A stretch of DNA of 64,000 nucleotides, taken from Vitrella brassicaformis CCMP3155 (Eukaryota; Protista; Chromerida). The notes beneath the pieces are model-generated. The model saw only the letters and a program-made list of their open reading frames with translations. It was not told the DNA's origin and did not search any database. Positions 25,305 to 46,628 of the stretch are shown here, piece by piece; within the stretch, counting starts at the first letter, position 1; each line of letters starts with the position of its first letter. The translations under genes and the position numbers were made by a program. Location of the stretch: assembly GCA_001179505.1 (NCBI GenBank), contig CDMY01000409.1, positions 20,845 through 84,844 on the forward strand. Direction: 5' to 3'.

Positions 25305-28300
25305 ATGGACGCCAACACGATGATGGATGACCGCACTCAAAGGATGTTCGAGCTGGAACTGATGCGACTGGTAAGCCTCTCACTCGTCAATCATTCATTT
25401 ATCCATCCATCCATCAAGTGCGTCCATACGCAATTGCCAATGTGTGGTCACTGCGGTGCAGGACGGCCACAGCCCCAGGAACGCCGGCAAGGTCAGCTCA
25501 CAAGAGGAGATCGAGATGGTGGCGGCCCCCCAGGAACGCCGGCAAGGTCAGCTCACAAGAGGAGATCGAGATGGGTGCAATACAAGCGGCGGGTGGCTGT
25601 CAGACCAGGCACGGACATAGCTGCAGACGTCATGATCAAGAGAGCCCCTCGCGACGCGATACACAAACGAATGAATTATGTTAACTGGTATGTAGGATAC
25701 ATCCACAGATATCATCTTGACATGCTTATTGTATGCTGCTTCTGGCAGGTTTTTCGCTCTGGTGGTGGTGTTTCTTGCCGTGATCCATGTGCTGGCTGAG
25801 CAGGTCGTAGCCGACCTGCCGTCATTCTACGACGAGTATGTCCTGCACAGCACATCCACAGCGACATGCAGTCACGCGAAGAATCCGTGTTGCCTGTGCT
25901 GTGGCACGTCATGTGTCACAGCTATGGTTTCTTTGCTTTCCCAACCATACAATCATACATCGACCAGAGCACCAACACGACCAAGCACTACCGGGTCGAG
26001 AGCAGCGGCTTGAGTGTCTTTTATGCCATTCTGTGGGCACTGGTCGCGACGGCGGGGCTCTACACCTTCATCCTGCACGCCGCCTTTTTTCGCCGCAAGA
26101 TATCGAATCTAAACCGCCACAAATGGAAGTCTTTCGTGCGGGCCCATCAGCGCAGACAGAGCATCAAGCAGCTCCACACAATCTCTCAGAGACACATCTC
26201 TAAGAGGTCGGTCGGCGGACAGGCTACGGAAGGGCTCGACGAGACCAGGTGGAGTGCCTGTTTGCGATCCGCGCGCATCATTTGGATTGAGGCGCTGCTG
26301 CTGCTCGAGGCTATACTGGGCGTAGGTGGACGGTAAGCGAAGCGAGCGACAAGTGTCTCGGTGTGCTATCTATGGGTCTCATGCAGCTTATTTTGGACTT
26401 CGTACTTCGTCGATGAGATTTTCACGGGTCATTTACAGCTCTATCGCGTTTTCTATATAGGCGGCTGGGACATCTTGCGTACGCACGGCGAAACACCTCC
26501 AGGTAGGTACATGGATGCTGCGAAGAATGGGCCCATCTTCTCTGTCTTTGTGTCGGCTGTACGCACTAGGTCACTGGGCGGCTTTCACCTCGCTGTCTCT
26601 GATAATTGCTCTGCACTCATGCGTCTTGCTGTGGGCTTGGCTCTCAAAGAAGCGGGGGCTGGCCATCTTGCTTTCATTTGTGGTCAACATGACTTATGCC
26701 GCACACCAAATTGGGACTGGACTGGACTGGACAGGCCGAACGAGAGGAGTCACTCTTGGTAGCGTCACAAGAGCCTGCCTTCTTGTTCGATGGTGTGTGC
26801 ATTCTTGTGCTCATGTCGGCGTTCAGGTACTCTCGTGCAGCTTCGGTCCGCCAACTTTTTGTTCTTCTTGGCGGTGTGGTATCCACTCTGGAAAGAAGCC
26901 CATACCTTGCACACGCTCGATGGACTGATCATGGTGCGCAACTATCTGCGGTGGAAACAACACAACGCCAGGAAACTGCACCCTAGTAAGCAGCCAAAGA
27001 CAACGACACTCGTGAGTTCGCCTTTCAGAGAACATGCTTTGGGCATAATGGATGGATGCAGCAATCCAGCCGAGAACGACGTGCATGCGGCCCCTGCCGA
27101 TGCCCGCCTTGCGGATGTGGCAAAAGATGCGGACTCGTCCGCTGAGCCTCTCAGCCATGTGCCCGAGGAGGTGATGCAAGCCAAGAATCAAGCAGAGGGC
27201 GCCCCGACCCCCGTCAGACGCAGCAAAAGCAGCCTTGAGCACAGTGACATGCTGCTCGAGCAAGCGGATGATATGTCTCTGCCGTCGGACGATCACCCGG
27301 TTCTGTCTCCCGTCCACAAGTCCGACACTCGAACGGGGCGATCCAGCATCAGGTCCGCCACTATCCCACGTGTGGGAGCGGCGAATAAAGAGCCCCCACC
27401 GACAAGGCGTCTGAGAGGGCCATCGATTGTCAGTGCTCTTGCTTATGTGAAGCCCATTCAGCCAAGTGAAGCGTCCCGGGCCACAACAACATCAATGATA
27501 TCGGCGGCCAGCTGGCACCCCGATGACCACTCGCCAGCAATGGTCACAGTGCGGTCCCACCTGACGGATCTGGTATCAGAGGTGACTGCCCTTGCAGGGC
27601 TGGGTGACCCAGACAGCCCAGAAGGCAAATTCAGCAATGCACAAGATCAAGAGCAGGAAGACAATCGCGAGATGGGATCCGAGAGGCGTGGAAGGCTGTT
27701 GCGGCTTCTCAGTGTTCTTGGTCGGGTTGAGAGGAACGTTCCTACACCAATCGCGGTCATTTGGTTCCTGATCTGCGTGAGAGCGACAGACAAGCAAAGC
27801 CAAGAATGAATGCCAAACGGACCGTTTCCCCCATGTGCCTTCAGTTGACCCTGTTGACTTTCCTGGTGACACAAATGATCCGCTCATCGGTGCAGTGCCC
27901 CACGTAAGGCCATCCACTCACACGAAGGAGAAGTGGGCCTTCCTGACCTTACAGCTGGTGCATCACAGGATTTCCGGATACAAGTACTGTCTTCAAAAGG
28001 TGGGCTCGTAGCAAGGGATCCACATGACAAGTGGATGTGCCTGATAGTAGCCTGTGTCGTAGACGTACCCGCCATGGGGCACAGAGAAGAACGCCATGGT
28101 ACGCCAAACAACACCGCGCGAGAAACGCTGTCCACAAGTGTCGGCTTCTCTCAAGTGATCCATTTGTGGATGCAGCGCCCGTGCAACTGCCGTCAGTACG
28201 GGGCGGGATTTGGCGTGGATCCAAGAGAGTTTCGGGACGGCATCGACGAGTACACTACCATTGAAGGTATCGGTGTTGGCTTCGATTCCTCGTCGACAGA

Positions 28301-31300
28301 AAGAGTTCTCAACGCCAAGCAAAAACTGCCTCTCCAGGCCATACCCGACTCGATTCACCACCACAAATTCCTTAAATGTATGCCTCGCTCAGCAGAAAGG
28401 AGCCCAACATGTCAAGCCGTTTGTTTCCGTTCAGACATTATTTATCAGTTGAGCGCGATCAGCTCATTGCCACGAGCGCTGCTGGCCCTGCCGGATTTGG
28501 AGTATATAAATCTCGCTTTCTGCGATATCGGTAGCTGTGTATGTATCCCTCAAACAGCCAGCCAGCCAGCCAGCCAGACAGCCAGACAGTTGCAATGTCT
28601 CTCACAGACAGACAGTTGCAATGTCTCTGTGCTCACCAGGCGAGGTGCCTGACTGGCTGCCGTATCTTCCCAAGCTGAAGGCACTGGACCTGCGATTGAA
28701 CCGCATCGCCAGTCTTCCCTTGACGATGACCAAGGCAGCTAATACCCTGAACAACCTCTTTCTGCTGCTCAATCCGATCTGCTTCAATGGTTGGTTCGAC
28801 ACCATCACTGACAGAGACATGCAGCGACTCTTCGATCGGCTGAAGCCCTGCCCCGACATCATCCAAGACCCATTGAGACCCGACACCAGAGCAAGGGCCA
28901 TTGACGAGGGCCACCTGCAGATCCATACACTGTCCGGGGCAACCGCTACAAGCGATGAGTGCCTTCCGATCTGCACGCTGGTATCACTCACATGACACGG
29001 ACAAAGGTGCAAGAGAACTCTGCAAATGTCCGTTTGTGTGTGTGTGCAGATGCACTCGTATTTCCGGGGGCTGGACGGCAATTTCGACAATTCTTTGTGT
29101 TTCAAGGAGATTGACAACGTGATATCGGTTGAAAAGGGGGTGTACGACAGCCTACTCAGACACTACCAGGCAGACGACCTCACCCTGCCATGCGCAAAAT
29201 GGAGTAAGGCAGTATGTATGTGCAAGCGAAATGATACGTCCATACTACTTATGTTGCTGTCCCTTTCCCTCAGCGACAGTGATGCAGTACGGAAGCCACG
29301 ATATTACTGACTGCTCAAGCTGTTCCTTTGCCATCACCGAGGTGGACCACCAGCGGCAGCACACGGGCGACCTCAGCACCGGTTCGACAGAAGCGAGGTG
29401 GTCCACACTGCCTGTTGCTGTCGTCGAGTCTAATGTGGGCCAGAGACACCAGAGATGCAGGCAGCCATGTTGATTTTGTGTGTGTGTGTGTGTATGTGTG
29501 TGTGTATGTGTATGTGCGTGTGCGCGGCAGGTGACCGGCAATGCTGTGTGGCACAACGACAAAGTGTATCTGCTCGCCAGCCAGATCCATGTCCATCCGC
29601 CGGCAATCCTCACCATCGAGCCAGGTGCACACATGATACGCTGTATCATGCCCGGCCTGTCAGACTTCATTGTATCGTGTGTCTTCTCACGCACAGGCAC
29701 ATTGATCCGTGGCGTCAACGTCATCAAGCGGGGCTTCTTCACTGGGTGAGAGCACCTCACATGTACACAATATGTGTGAATGCTGCAGACACGTATTTGT
29801 CGCAGCCTCACCAGTGCTCTGGTCGTCAATCCAGGCGCGAAGATATACGTCGCAAACAAGAGACACACACCGCATCAGCACAGAATTGAATTGAATGGAT
29901 GTGTGTCACCCGTTCTCAGGCGAATGGAACAAAGGAGCAGCCGATCACCTTCACCGGTGAATGAAAATGACCGGTGAAGGATTCACCGCCTCTTTTCACT
30001 TTCAGCTGAGGACGTTAATGACGAGACCAAACCCGAGAGGGAAAAGTGGGGCGGCCTGGTGATCCTGGGCAAGTGGGTCTCGCAGCACAGGCAGACAGAC
30101 AGAAAGAAAGACAGACAGACGTGTTTGTCGCTTTCCCTCCTTTACAGGGCGCCTACCAACAACGGCGGTGACGATGGCATGGACGTCATCGACAGCCTCG
30201 TCCCTGAGGTCAAATACGGAGGTTGGTGCGATCGGACTCAACCACTATCACACAGTCAATCGTTCTCCTTTTTCATCAGGGACGAATGCGAGTGACGATT
30301 CCGGTGTCCTGCGGTACGTGCGTGTGTGGTATGGCGGAAAGGAGATCGGCGAGAACAACGAAATCAACGGAATTACGTTCGGCAGTGTGGTGGGATTAAT
30401 CAATGAATGACGTGTGGATATGCATTCACGTAGCGCATGTACATGATGGGAATTGCAGGGAAATGGGACCACAGTCGAGTATGTGGAAGTGGCATTCGAT
30501 GTTGACGAGTGAGCGAGAGGGAGACAGGGCGATTCAGAGACACCACTATATTGTGCCTGTTGCTCTTTCAGTGGAATTGAGCTCTTTGGTGGCACCGTCA
30601 ACCTGCGCTACGTGTCTCTCCGTGTAAGACGGAGGACATACGTAGAGTCGCTCACATTGCGATGTGCCACATGATGGATGCAGTGCAATGGAGACGATTC
30701 GCTGGACGCCGACAACGGCTGGCAGGGCAAGGCACAATTCATCTTTATTGTCGTCTGTAAAAACGGGACTCACGAGGAAGGTAGGAGAGAAGCAGAGACA
30801 CGCGGAAAGCCAGCACTTGACGTGCATCGTCTGCTTCTGGTCCATTCGGAAATTCAGATCGTTACTTGATCGACAAAGCGTTTGAATTCGATAGCAACGG
30901 CAAGGGTTTTGATTTGGAGCCAAGGACCCACCCACAAATCAGCCACGTGACAGTCCTTGGCCCCGGCAGCAGCAACGACACATGGGAGCGGACGGCGGCA
31001 TCGAAGCGGCTGTTCGAGTTCAGGGAAGGGGCGGGAGGGACGTACGTCAACTTCATTGTGACGGATGCCGAGGCAGGTATCGACTTCGACGACTTCGATG
31101 AAGACGGTACGAACAAAACCATGCAGATGGAGTCACTGAGTCACTGCATCATTTGTATGCGACTGTATACGGGCGCCGCTCCGTTCACTTCGTCCTACCC
31201 CAATGAGACGAGTCCCCTGCAGTTCCCGGACTTCTTCTATTGGTCGCCACTCGCCATCATGCACAACATCGACGCACTGCGATACAAACCCGATGTCAGC

Positions 31301-31624
31301 ACATCTGTCCCTGAGCCCATCGACGTGCTAACCGTCGACCCCATGCTGAATCAGGCAAACACACACACCACAAAAGAGACACGAGCGCTCGCACTTCCTG
31401 TTCGACCGACACACCTCCTCAGCCGCCGCACGATGTCTCCACCAGCTGTGCATGTATGGCTATGTGAGCGACACCGACAGCAATTGCCGTGCGGTGGGGA
31501 GACGCGGAGCAGAGCTTGCCCAACGTTCCCTCGCCCCCCTTGCCCCAGCACTGCGGCCATCATCCAACACTGGGCAGATGCGATGTCTCGGCGTCCCCCA
31601 CACGCGAAAAGCGCCTCAATGTAG
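25305..31624 (+). CDS. Giant chimeric membrane protein: multi-TM region + Cys-rich cap/LRRs + EF-hand-like loop + bacterial-type parallel beta-helix domain (3' end uncertain)
   Basis: Phase-compatible GT-AG exon chain from MDANTMM.. through several hydrophobic helices, IAVIWFLICLTLLTFLVTQMI, LRRs (LPKLKALDLRLNRIASLP..LLLNPIC), LDGNFDNSLCFKE, then TIEPG..ANGTKEQPITFT..KWGGLVILG..DSGVLRYVRV..NEINGITFGSVGNGTTVEYV..DDGIELFGGTVN..GDDSLDADNGWQGKAQF. Confidence 0.7.
25473..25574 (+). repeat. Tandem duplication of a ~47-bp unit with 55-bp period inside a coding exon
   Basis: ccccaggaacgccggcaaggtcagctcacaagaggagatcgagatgg at 25473 and 25528. Confidence 0.95.
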
Positions 31625-46025: not shown

Positions 46026-46628
46026 TCAGCTGATATCAGTCAGCCCCGTGACGATGATCTGCTCATTCGACCGCACGACATTTTCCTCTCGCAGCACGCC
46101 CTCGCCCCTCGGCACATACTGACTGTCGTACCCTTCCTCTCGCCATTTCCTGCAGCTGCAGAACCACGTGTGGCCACCACTGCAACCACTGGCGTCGTGT
46201 GTCTTGCACTTGCCCATGTCAACGGCGAGCGTCAGCACCGTACCCTTACGATGGTGGCGGGCGAATGCAGTCGCCTTGCTGTAGTCGCGCGTGACGTAGA
46301 TGCCGGGGCCGAACATGCCGTCCCTGGACGGCCGGAAGCCGTTGCGTCTGATGGACTCAGCATTCGATTTTGACGTTCCATGATAGCTGAAGACAAGACA
46401 CGCACACACAGGGGACAGCTGAATGCATGAATGCCGTGAATGTGTTTGTGCGTGATCTGAGTGCCTGCCCACCAAGTGTAAGAGTTGGCCAGCCCAGTGC
46501 CATTGTGTGCCACCGAGTAAGAGTCTGGCCTTCCTGCCGCTCCCCTTGCAGTTGAAGCATGATCGCCTCTTTGTGAGATAGGCGAATAGGTCGCCCGCAG
46601 CCAACGCACCAAAGATCCAACCCCACAT
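46026..46628 (-). CDS. Gig2-like / PARP-fold ADP-ribosyltransferase with hydrophobic N-terminus
   Basis: YHGTSKSNAESIRRNGFRPSRDGMFGPGIYVTRDYSKA..GYDSQYVPRGEGVLREENVV (H-Y-E triad); N-terminal MWGWIFGALAAGDLFAYL and one CFNCKGSG motif; intron boundaries unresolved. Confidence 0.8.
   Translation of the reverse strand: MWGWIFGALAAGDLFAYLTKRRSCFNCKGSGRKARLLLGGTQWHWAGQLLHLVGRHSDHAQTHSRHSCIQLSPVCACLVFSYHGTSKSNAESIRRNGFRPSRDGMFGPGIYVTRDYSKATAFARHHRKGTVLTLAVDMGKCKTHDASGCSGGHTWFCSCRKWREEGYDSQYVPRGEGVLREENVVRSNEQIIVTGLTDIS

What the first reader, a model, noticed from the sequence alone, without database searches (positions are those of the whole stretch)
25305..31624. Giant chimeric receptor-like gene: polytopic membrane domain + LRR + EF-hand + bacterial beta-helix
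Seen: what the ORF track shows as many unrelated fragments can be joined by phase-compatible GT-AG introns into one frame. It has several TM helices, a long Ser/acidic loop, one more TM helix (IAVIWFLICLTLLTFLVTQMI), a Cys-rich cap, LRRs ending in NPIC, a DGNFDNSLCFKE EF-hand-like loop, and a beta-helix domain. Inference: a surface sensor or adhesin whose LRR and beta-helix ectodomain is tied to a multi-pass membrane module. I do not recognise this architecture from any characterised protein.
Basis: partly seen in the sequence, partly recalled or inferred. Interest (0 to 1): 0.75.

Follow-up and report, generated by a model that had tools for sequence, protein, structure and literature searches.

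The report
Seven-pass LRR receptor with bacterial beta-helix
In the alga Vitrella brassicaformis, a free-living relative of malaria parasites, this stretch is most likely one 28-exon gene that public databases split into two unnamed proteins. It belongs to a previously undescribed 11-copy family of multi-pass membrane proteins with an outward-facing leucine-rich-repeat domain, and only this copy also carries a bacterial-type sugar-enzyme-like beta-helix.

Summary
The genome is Vitrella brassicaformis CCMP3155: 72,700,666 bp in 1064 scaffolds, matching eLife 2015;4:e06974.

Public annotation puts two models here:
- P0140 (434 aa) is a six-helix membrane protein with no known relatives.
- P0001 (841 aa) has one TM helix, a Cys cap, 4-5 LRRs, an EF-hand-like loop and one Beta_helix_4 domain (Pfam PF28492, pectate-lyase-like).

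Three results argue for one gene:
- Frame 0 is open for 348 codons across the annotated gap. Only 25 of 5000 shuffles keep the 170 bridge codons free of stops.
- At least eight other Vitrella loci carry both modules in the same order and on the same strand.
- In the paralog on contig C275, a single 399-codon open frame holds the last polytopic helix, the loop, the next TM helix and the Cys cap.

A 28-exon model of 1425 aa stays in frame. The join between the family ectodomain and the beta-helix lies inside one exon. Only this copy has the beta-helix. That domain is sister to a second Vitrella copy and sits in a subclade mixing algal copies with T9SS-tailed (bacterial) proteins. The public model also skips about 17 conserved residues.

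The function is inferred: probably a surface sensor or adhesin for glycans. There is no transcript evidence.

The parts
25305..26985 (+). N-terminal polytopic module, about six TM helices. Exons: 25305-25370, 25462-25546, 25609-25687, 25749-25835, 25922-26332, 26387-26502, 26570-26758, and the start of exon 8 at 26827. This equals residues 1-397 of public model P0140.
   Evidence: P0140 was mapped onto the window and all splice sites are GT-AG. Hydropathy and the positive-inside pattern give an N-in/C-in topology, and AlphaFold predicts six long helices. The core motifs LQLYxCxxLGGxDL, EVPAGH and LIALHS are conserved in paralogs. There is no Pfam hit. Exons 1-3 have little paralog support.
26827..27776 (+). 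Exon 8, a single 950-nt exon. It encodes the last polytopic TM helix (FLFFLAVWYPLW), a basic stop-transfer stretch, a cytosolic Ser/acidic loop of about 290 aa, and the first half of the seventh TM helix.
   Evidence: It lies inside an open frame of 348 codons, 26763-27806. The paralog L005:4607-5803:- holds the same parts in one 399-codon open frame.
26986..27494 (+). The bridge that the public annotation treats as the last intron of P0140 (26986-27061), a frame-shifted terminal exon (27062-27174) and an intergenic gap (27175-27494).
   Evidence: Frame 0 has no stop in 170 codons, which 25 of 5000 shuffles reproduce. For 27174-27494, the codon log-odds are +10.5 bits in frame 0 against -15 bits in each of the other two frames. 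Against this, GC periodicity is flat in 27175-27494, and 26985-27061 scores like intron sequence. An in-frame 84-nt intron, 26986-27069, is also possible.
27750..27880 (+). Seventh TM helix, IAVIWFLIC|LTLLTFLVTQMI, split by intron 27777-27844. It is oriented from cytosol to outside.
   Evidence: Its hydropathy peak is 2.43. The upstream flank is Arg-rich. The helix is conserved in paralogs.
27881..28289 (+). Cys-rich cap, C..C..CNC. It spans the end of exon 9, micro-exons 27969-27999 and 28063-28098, and the start of exon 12.
   Evidence: The same motif order, CP..C..PP.G..PCNCR, is read from a single open frame in paralogs L005 and L011. That supports the annotated micro-exons.
28290..28831 (+). 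Four to five leucine-rich repeats, ending in LLLNPIC and a Cys-containing C-terminal cap.
   Evidence: phmmer against PDB chains gives E 1.5e-8 to 1e-5 for P0001 residues 186-286. The LRR part of NCBIfam XopAC matches at E 2.7e-8. Pfam LRR_4 matches at E 0.0016, below its gathering score.
29074..29109 (+). EF-hand-like loop DGNFDNSLCFKE, flanked by conserved cysteines.
   Evidence: Paralogs carry DADGDELVC(M/L)DD and DSDGDHMICFDE at the same place. By my own reading, the latter fits PROSITE PS00018 in full, while the window copy fails at position 4. No EF-hand HMM matches.
29274..29434 (+). Exon 16, the fusion junction. Its first half (..DITDCSSCSFAITE) is homologous to the family ectodomain of paralogs. 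Its last codons (LPVAVVESN) begin the beta-helix domain.
   Evidence: Paralog matches reach P0001 residue 423. Beta_helix_4 homologs align from residue 450 or so. Both positions lie in the block 29276-29437.
29420..31354 (+). A single Beta_helix_4 domain (Pfam PF28492, pectate-lyase-like right-handed beta-helix) in 12 exons.
   Evidence: The precomputed Pfam hit and 1148 relatives come. The family name and a structural TM-score of 0.8 to family clusters come. The motifs WGG, YGG, DxSG, NEING, DDGxExFGG and GDDxxDxDxGxxG are retained. There are seven N-x-S/T sequons in the ectodomain and none in the cytosolic head.
29806..29956 (+). Corrected exons 29806-29848 and 29920-29956. The public model instead ends this exon at 29834 and uses a 171-nt GC-AG intron, 29835-30005.
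   Evidence: Every homolog has 'G..I.A.GT...PITFT' here and the public model lacks it. The two exons supply GAKIY|ANGTKEQPITFT through GT-AG introns of 71 and 49 nt, and the frame is kept.
31355..31624 (+). Uncertain 3' end.
   Evidence: The tail is not conserved. The C-terminal 'DPRP..GSPA..FF..GAF..W.GWT' part of the bacterial and paralog domains is absent, and nothing like it lies downstream to 36000.

Best explanation
This is one protein-coding gene of Vitrella brassicaformis: about 28 exons and about 1425 aa. Public annotation has cut it into two unnamed proteins.

Shown:
- It is a member of a Vitrella family with at least 11 loci.
- The family's common plan is a six-helix N-terminal membrane module with no known relatives, then a long charged disordered loop, then a seventh TM helix. 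After that comes a C-terminal domain made of a Cys cap, 4-5 LRRs and a Cys-framed EF-hand-like loop.
- In this copy alone, a single bacterial-type Beta_helix_4 (pectate-lyase-like) domain has been joined in frame, within one exon, to the end of that domain.
- The beta-helix is the sister of a second Vitrella copy (P0059). P0059 has a hydrophobic N-terminal, signal-peptide-like stretch and a hydrophobic C-terminal tail.

Inferred:
- The N-terminus and the loop are cytosolic, and the LRR/beta-helix part faces outward.
- The protein acts as a surface sensor or adhesin. The beta-helix, possibly with Ca2+ at the EF-like loop and the LRRs, binds or cuts an extracellular polysaccharide or another surface ligand.
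- The multi-pass module anchors the protein and may pass the signal through the membrane and the loop.
For: - Genome identity: 72,700,666 bp in 1064 contigs, the same figures as in PMC4501334. P0001 and P0140 are named as Vitrella proteins.
- Open bridge: 348 codons are open, with shuffle P about 0.005 and a frame-0 codon preference of about 25 bits.
- Collinearity: both modules lie in the same order and on the same strand on C55, C279, C730, C528, C275, C130, C241 and C419.
- Paralog L005: one 399-codon open frame holds homologs of P0140 exon 8 (BLASTP E 3e-7) and of P0001 residues 75-142 (tblastn E 9e-7). The sequence was read.
- Paralog L006: the exon with the seventh TM helix has no ATG before the helix.
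- Frame continuity: the 28-exon model is in frame.
- Fusion junction: it lies inside exon 16.
- Domain identities.
- Beta-helix origin: the tree gives SH-aLRT 98 with P0059 and 96 for a clade of 28 domain rows. That clade holds all 10 eukaryote-labelled rows plus 18 others, among them four T9SS-tailed bacterial proteins.
- Outward orientation: seven N-glycosylation sequons lie in the ectodomain and none in the cytosolic head.
Against: - No transcript evidence was available.
- The public, RNA-seq-guided annotation splits the locus. Median distance between Vitrella genes is only 92 bp, so a 321-bp gap is not abnormal.
- GC periodicity is flat in 27175-27494, and the codon score is about zero in 27300-27494.
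- 26986-27061 looks intron-like and has good splice sites.
- The function is entirely inferred. No member of Beta_helix_4 that I could find is characterised.
- The structure models were poor (mean pLDDT 45 and 62).
- This copy lacks the C-terminal part of the beta-helix domain.
Confidence: 0.72

Rival explanations
1. There are two separate genes, as annotated. One is a six-helix membrane protein (P0140) that ends at 27174. The other is a type II membrane protein (P0001) that starts at 27495. The paralogous loci would then be copies of a two-gene cassette.
For: The public models are P0140 and P0001. The annotated intron 26986-27061 has a GTAAGC donor, a CAG acceptor and intron-like codon statistics. 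Vitrella genes are very closely packed. P0001 alone would be a workable signal-anchor protein.
Against: In paralog L005 both modules share one open frame. In L006 the seventh-TM exon has no start codon before the helix. The window's bridge is open in the frame of both flanking exons. The annotated P0140 tail is a 37-aa Arg/Pro/Met/Cys-rich string with no paralog support. Collinearity is kept in 8 or more copies that share only about 30% identity.
Confidence: 0.12
2. It is one transcript with alternative splicing. Retaining 26986-27061, or using the in-frame acceptor at 27069, gives the full receptor. Using the acceptor at 27061 gives a truncated membrane protein of 434 aa.
For: Two acceptors lie 8 nt apart (AG at 27060-61 and at 27068-69). 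The second gives an 84-nt in-frame intron, as read directly. The interval has intron-like codon statistics.
Against: No expression data exist. The L005 paralog needs no intron at this position.
Confidence: 0.1
3. The beta-helix part is a recent, possibly decaying add-on, or a gene-model artefact that is not translated as part of the receptor.
For: Only this copy of the family has it. It lacks the C-terminal subdomain found in P0059 and in bacterial relatives. Its branch on the tree is long, at 0.71. The 3' end is uncertain.
Against: The junction lies inside one exon. Twelve exons stay in frame. All family motifs are kept. The codon statistics are those of coding sequence.
Confidence: 0.06

Closest known systems
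Bacterial Beta_helix_4 (PF28492) surface proteins. Most listed relatives carry a T9SS sorting tail, and those that are named are mainly Bacteroidota. Algal copies include Ostreobium P0014, Pycnococcus P0024, Chrysochromulina P0061 and Vitrella P0059.
   Same: The beta-helix domain is the same, at 35-44% identity, with all conserved acidic and glycine motifs retained. The proteins are secreted or surface-exposed.
   Different: Relatives usually have 2-3 tandem domains plus a Por_Secre_tail, Ig or PKD domains. None of the 120 listed relatives has LRRs or a multi-pass membrane part. The window copy has a single domain, broken by 11 introns and missing its C-terminal subdomain.
LRR receptor-like proteins with Cys-capped ectodomains, such as plant RLPs/RLKs, LGR-type GPCRs and Toll-like receptors.
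   Same: They have extracellular LRRs with N- and C-terminal Cys caps tied to a membrane part. The LRRs here match LGR4, SHOC2 and LRRC8 repeats by sequence.
   Different: Here the LRR domain is C-terminal to the membrane part, after a seventh helix. The predicted topology is N-in/C-out, the opposite of GPCRs. There is no kinase, TIR or 7tm Pfam domain. The membrane module has no detectable relatives outside Vitrella.
LRRC8/VRAC channels (4 TM helices plus C-terminal LRRs).
   Same: A multi-pass N-terminal module is followed by C-terminal LRRs.
   Different: LRRC8 LRRs are cytosolic with no extra TM helix, whereas here a seventh helix is predicted to place them outside. The only similarity is in the generic LRR repeats, apart from one generic helical structure match (Z 7.5).
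Extracellular EF-hand or dockerin-type Ca2+ loops.
   Same: The DxDxDxx[VIL]Cxx[DE] loop is conserved across the family and framed by cysteines. Some bacterial Beta_helix_4 proteins carry dockerin repeats (PF00404; P0052 and P0063).
   Different: There is a single loop rather than a pair. No HMM matches it. The window copy breaks the PROSITE pattern at position 4.

Membership tests
Leucine-rich repeat proteins | Tandem repeats of 20-29 residues with the LxxLxLxxN/CxL core | tested here: met
   P0001 residues 186-286 match many solved LRR proteins at E 1.5e-8 to 1e-5. NCBIfam XopAC LRR region matches at E 2.7e-8. Pfam LRR_4 and LRR_8 match at E 0.002-0.004, below their gathering scores.
Beta_helix_4 (Pfam PF28492) | Match to the family model | tested here: met
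   The precomputed Pfam hit is listed for P0001. The ESM Atlas names the family and gives cosine 0.95 and structural TM-score 0.8. The family is absent from the local Pfam copy, so I could not rescore it myself.
Beta_helix_4 (Pfam PF28492) | Conserved motifs WGG, YGG, DNSG, NEINGxT, DDGxExFGG and GDDxxDxDxGxxG | tested here: met
   All are present in the alignment with 12 relatives. DNSG reads DDSG in this copy.
Beta_helix_4 (Pfam PF28492) | C-terminal part 'DPRP..GSPA..FF..GAF..W.GWT', seen in P0059 and in the bacterial consensus | tested here: not met
   It is absent after ..VDPMLNQ, and there is no match downstream to 36000. Whether it belongs to the Pfam domain proper is unknown to me.
Pectate lyases (enzymatic function) | Catalytic base and Ca2+-binding acidic residues on the beta-helix face, with lyase activity | not testable with these tools
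   There are only weak fold matches to PL3 lyases, pectin methylesterases and adhesins (E 0.07 or more). No characterised family member was found.
EF-hand | Canonical 12-residue loop (PROSITE PS00018) within a helix-loop-helix, usually in pairs | tested here: inconclusive
   Positions 1, 3, 5, 8 and 12 fit, but position 4 (F) is excluded by the pattern. By my reading, paralog L011 fits in full. No EF-hand HMM matches, and the structure model is unusable here.
GPCR / 7TM receptors | Seven-helix bundle, N-out/C-in topology, and a match to a 7tm family | tested here: not met
   The only hit is a weak STE3 match (E 0.005, below cut-off) to an open frame that the gene model partly splices out. P0140 as a whole gives no 7tm hit. 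The positive-inside pattern gives N-in. The fold search returns only generic helical bundles, Z 9.5 or less.
Vitrella '6TM-loop-TM-LRR' family (defined here) | Polytopic core (LQLYxCxxLGGxDL, EVPAGH, LIALHS) followed on the same strand by a TM helix, a CNC Cys cap, LRRs and a DxDxD loop | tested here: met
   A profile of the core finds 11 loci, and 8 of the other loci show the downstream module.

The most novel reading that the evidence does not exclude
The family would be a new class of eukaryotic surface receptor. It would have a seven-pass N-in/C-out membrane core unrelated to GPCRs, with ligand binding by a C-terminal LRR ectodomain coupled to a channel-like or signalling membrane module. 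This copy would show such a receptor gaining a new specificity by capturing a bacterial-type glycan-binding or glycan-cutting beta-helix.
Probability: 0.25. Interest if true: 0.7.

Novelty: new variant of a known kind. Interest (0 to 1): 0.5.

Why it matters
Chromerids are the free-living sister group of apicomplexan parasites, and their surface proteins bear on how host-recognition repertoires arose. This locus has four points of interest:
- It shows an undescribed, expanded family of multi-pass LRR membrane proteins.
- It gives a clear case of a bacterial-type domain that is fully 'eukaryotised' (11 introns) and then welded onto a resident receptor gene.
- It gives a concrete correction of two public gene models.
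- It leaves a membrane module with no detectable relatives as a target for structural and functional work.

Tried and rejected
- Pfam on single exons gave nothing significant.
- My first hand-made exon joins in 25800-26850 used introns of 14-26 nt. I dropped them in favour of the public P0140 exons, which have 54-91-nt GT-AG introns.
- Metagenome contig L004 (ENA ERZ893782) was hoped to be an orthologous locus for a Ka/Ks test. It shares only the last large exon.
- A scan of JGI metagenome contigs with the bridge exon found no relative.
- The look-up of encoding contigs does not return records of this genome.
- The ESM Atlas, Pfam, AlphaFold and VIA-align gave no fold or family for the polytopic module.
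- AlphaFold of P0001 with a 7-row alignment was poor (pLDDT 45), and the LRR and EF-like parts were unusable. The deeper alignment A1 was not used, because two-domain bacterial rows misalign onto the N-terminal half.
- Foldseek gave only weak beta-helix matches.
- A look for further domains downstream of the paralogs showed nothing obvious, and I did not pursue it.
- A word-based search with P0001 residues 100-455 found only generic LRR proteins and missed even the Vitrella paralogs. It therefore says nothing about relatives in other species.
- The joined 1425-aa model was neither searched nor folded. It was assembled only inside a script to check frame continuity, and it was not printed.
Full report
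**Identity of the genome.** The window is contig C409:20845-84844 of an assembly of 72,700,666 bp in 1064 contigs. These are exactly the figures given for Vitrella brassicaformis in Woo et al., eLife 2015;4:e06974 (PMC4501334). The two proteins encoded here are labelled 'unnamed protein product [Vitrella brassicaformis CCMP3155]'. The region is made of short exons and introns of 49-109 nt.

**What public annotation has.** A search of 1.8 billion representative proteins with the last large exon returned P0001 (841 aa, 100% identical). P0001 maps to about 20 exons between 27495 and 31467. A word search with the 348-codon open frame 26763-27806 returned P0140 (434 aa). After eight exons it uses an intron at 26986-27061 that shifts to frame 1, and it stops at 27174. 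The public view is therefore two genes with 321 bp between stop and start.

**Domains.**
- P0001 has one strong TM helix at residues 84-106, followed by four cysteines in a C..C..CNC pattern.
- Next come 4-5 LRRs. Residues 186-286 match solved LRR proteins at E 1.5e-8. Pfam LRR models match only below their gathering scores.
- Next is a Cys-framed loop, DGNFDNSLCFKE.
- Last is one Beta_helix_4 domain, PF28492, 'pectate-lyase like beta helix'.
- That family has more than 1100 relatives in the search. Most listed ones carry a T9SS sorting tail, those that are named are mainly Bacteroidota, and most have two or three tandem domains. Copies also occur in Ostreobium, Pycnococcus and Chrysochromulina, and there is a second Vitrella protein, P0059.
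- All conserved motifs are retained in the window copy.
- On a quick maximum-likelihood tree the window domain is sister to P0059 (SH-aLRT 98). Both lie inside a clade of 28 domain rows (SH-aLRT 96). That clade holds all 10 eukaryote-labelled rows and 18 others, among them four T9SS-tailed bacterial proteins.
- P0059 has a hydrophobic N-terminal, signal-peptide-like stretch, the domain, and a hydrophobic C-terminal tail. In Vitrella the domain is therefore probably a surface domain.
- P0140 has about six TM helices and no detectable family.

**One gene or two: evidence inside the window.**
- Frame 0 is open from 26763 to 27806. It links the last P0140 helix to the P0001 helix.
- The 170 codons between the annotated donor (26986) and the P0001 start (27495) have no stop. 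Only 25 of 5000 dinucleotide shuffles reproduce this.
- For 27174-27494, codon log-odds favour frame 0, at +10.5 bits against about -15 bits in each other frame.
- Against this, GC periodicity there is flat, and 26985-27061 scores like intron sequence.
- Vitrella genes are normally very close together, with a median gap of 92 bp.
- On this evidence alone I would have said about even odds.

**One gene or two: evidence from paralogs.**
- Six-frame searches of the same genome show that both modules recur in the same order, on the same strand and 1-3 kb apart. This holds on C55, C279, C730, C528, C275, C130, C241 and C419.
- A profile of the polytopic core finds 11 loci.
- In the C275 copy (L005:4607-5803:-), a single uninterrupted 399-codon open frame contains three parts in order. 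First is a homolog of P0140 exon 8, 'GILDFLSAFVPLL..NYLRFK', with BLASTP E 3e-7 to window:26829-27776. Second is a charged loop of about 190 aa. Third is a homolog of P0001 residues 75-142, the TM helix and the Cys cap up to PCNCRS, with tblastn E 9e-7. The sequence was read.
- In the C130 copy, the open frame of the seventh-TM exon has no ATG before the helix. The preceding polytopic exon runs on for 180 codons of loop.
- The family plan is therefore one protein, and the split in the window is most probably an annotation error.
- A 28-exon model that uses exon 8 as one piece is in frame: 4278 nt, 1425 aa, no internal stop. P0140 residues 1-397 form its prefix, and P0001 starts at residue 568.
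- An alternative in-frame 84-nt intron, 26986-27069, is possible.

**The second junction.** Paralog homology runs to P0001 residue 423 (..DCSSCSFAITE). Beta-helix homology starts at about residue 450. Both lie in exon 16, 29274-29434. None of the eight paralog loci fetched has any beta-helix match. The two other beta-helix loci in the genome, C243 and C236, lie on contigs without any family module. The beta-helix is therefore an add-on special to this copy. It probably derives from a duplicate of a P0059-like gene.

**Corrections to the public model.** P0001 lacks the 'G..I.A.GT...PITFT' strand that every homolog has. Exons 29806-29848 and 29920-29956, with GT-AG introns of 71 and 49 nt, restore it. 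They replace an odd 171-nt GC-AG intron. The 3' end is uncertain, resting on another GC-AG intron. The C-terminal subdomain of the family is missing and was not found downstream.

**EF-hand claim.** The loop fits positions 1, 3, 5, 8 and 12 of the canonical EF loop but has Phe at position 4. Paralogs have DADGDELVC(M/L)DD and DSDGDHMICFDE at the same place, so an acidic loop is a conserved family feature. No EF-hand HMM matches, and the AlphaFold model is unusable there. 'EF-hand-like, possibly Ca2+-binding' is as far as the evidence goes.

**Topology and mechanism (inferred).**
- Basic residues cluster after helices 2, 4 and 6 and before helix 7.
- The ectodomain carries seven N-x-S/T sequons and 19 cysteines, while the head of P0001 has none of the sequons.
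- This fits an N-in topology with a cytosolic loop and an extracellular LRR/beta-helix part.
- I propose a surface sensor or adhesin whose beta-helix binds or cuts a polysaccharide. The multi-pass module would act as anchor and possible transducer.
- Nothing here tests activity.

**Limits.**
- No transcript data were reachable.
- The joined model was not searched or folded. Searches used the public models and single exons by reference, and the join was made only inside a script to check the frame.
- Whether the family exists outside Vitrella is untested, because the searches left were too insensitive.

**Verdict.** The function is speculative. This is a new domain architecture and a new lineage-specific family built partly from known parts.

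Noticed in passing
L004:8052-8385 (ENA ERZ893782 contig k147_3959343) against window 31024-31319: An 8.9-kb metagenome contig carries a copy of only the last large beta-helix exon, 89.5% identical at the nucleotide level. Nothing else in the contig matches this locus. It points to a close relative of Vitrella in that sample, or to a dispersed exon fragment.
   Followed up: partly
window 25473-25573: A 47-nt stretch (ccccaggaacgccggcaaggtcagc...gagatgg) occurs twice, 54 nt apart. The public P0140 model reads the first copy as coding and uses 'caag|gt' in the second copy as a donor. Exons 1-3 of the gene are therefore the least secure part.
   Followed up: no
window 29835-30005 and 31355-31422: Both non-canonical GC-AG introns in the public model P0001 sit at places where the model is doubtful. 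One hides two conserved exons. The other defines an unconserved 14-aa tail.
   Followed up: yes
G000:C419:40252-41501 and 46241-46594: Two copies of the polytopic core lie about 5.5 kb apart on the same strand. Each may be followed by its own TM/LRR part, which would make this a tandem pair of family members.
   Followed up: partly
P0059 (Vitrella paralog); own-genome beta-helix loci C243:474639-475668 and C236:120450-121372: The other Vitrella Beta_helix_4 genes stand alone. P0059 has a hydrophobic N-terminal, signal-peptide-like stretch, the domain, and a hydrophobic C-terminal tail. On C243, residues 519-582 of the domain are in one open piece, whereas the window copy has two introns there, so intron positions differ between the copies.
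   Followed up: partly
window 28555-28628, 29036-29049, 29477-29522, 30087-30120: The introns of this gene carry short microsatellites, (CAGC)n, (TG)n and (ACAG)n, and a 26-nt tandem duplication.
   Followed up: no
P0022-P0139: Most Beta_helix_4 proteins carry two or three tandem copies of the domain. Within a protein the copies are each other's closest relatives, which suggests repeated internal duplication or concerted evolution.
   Followed up: no
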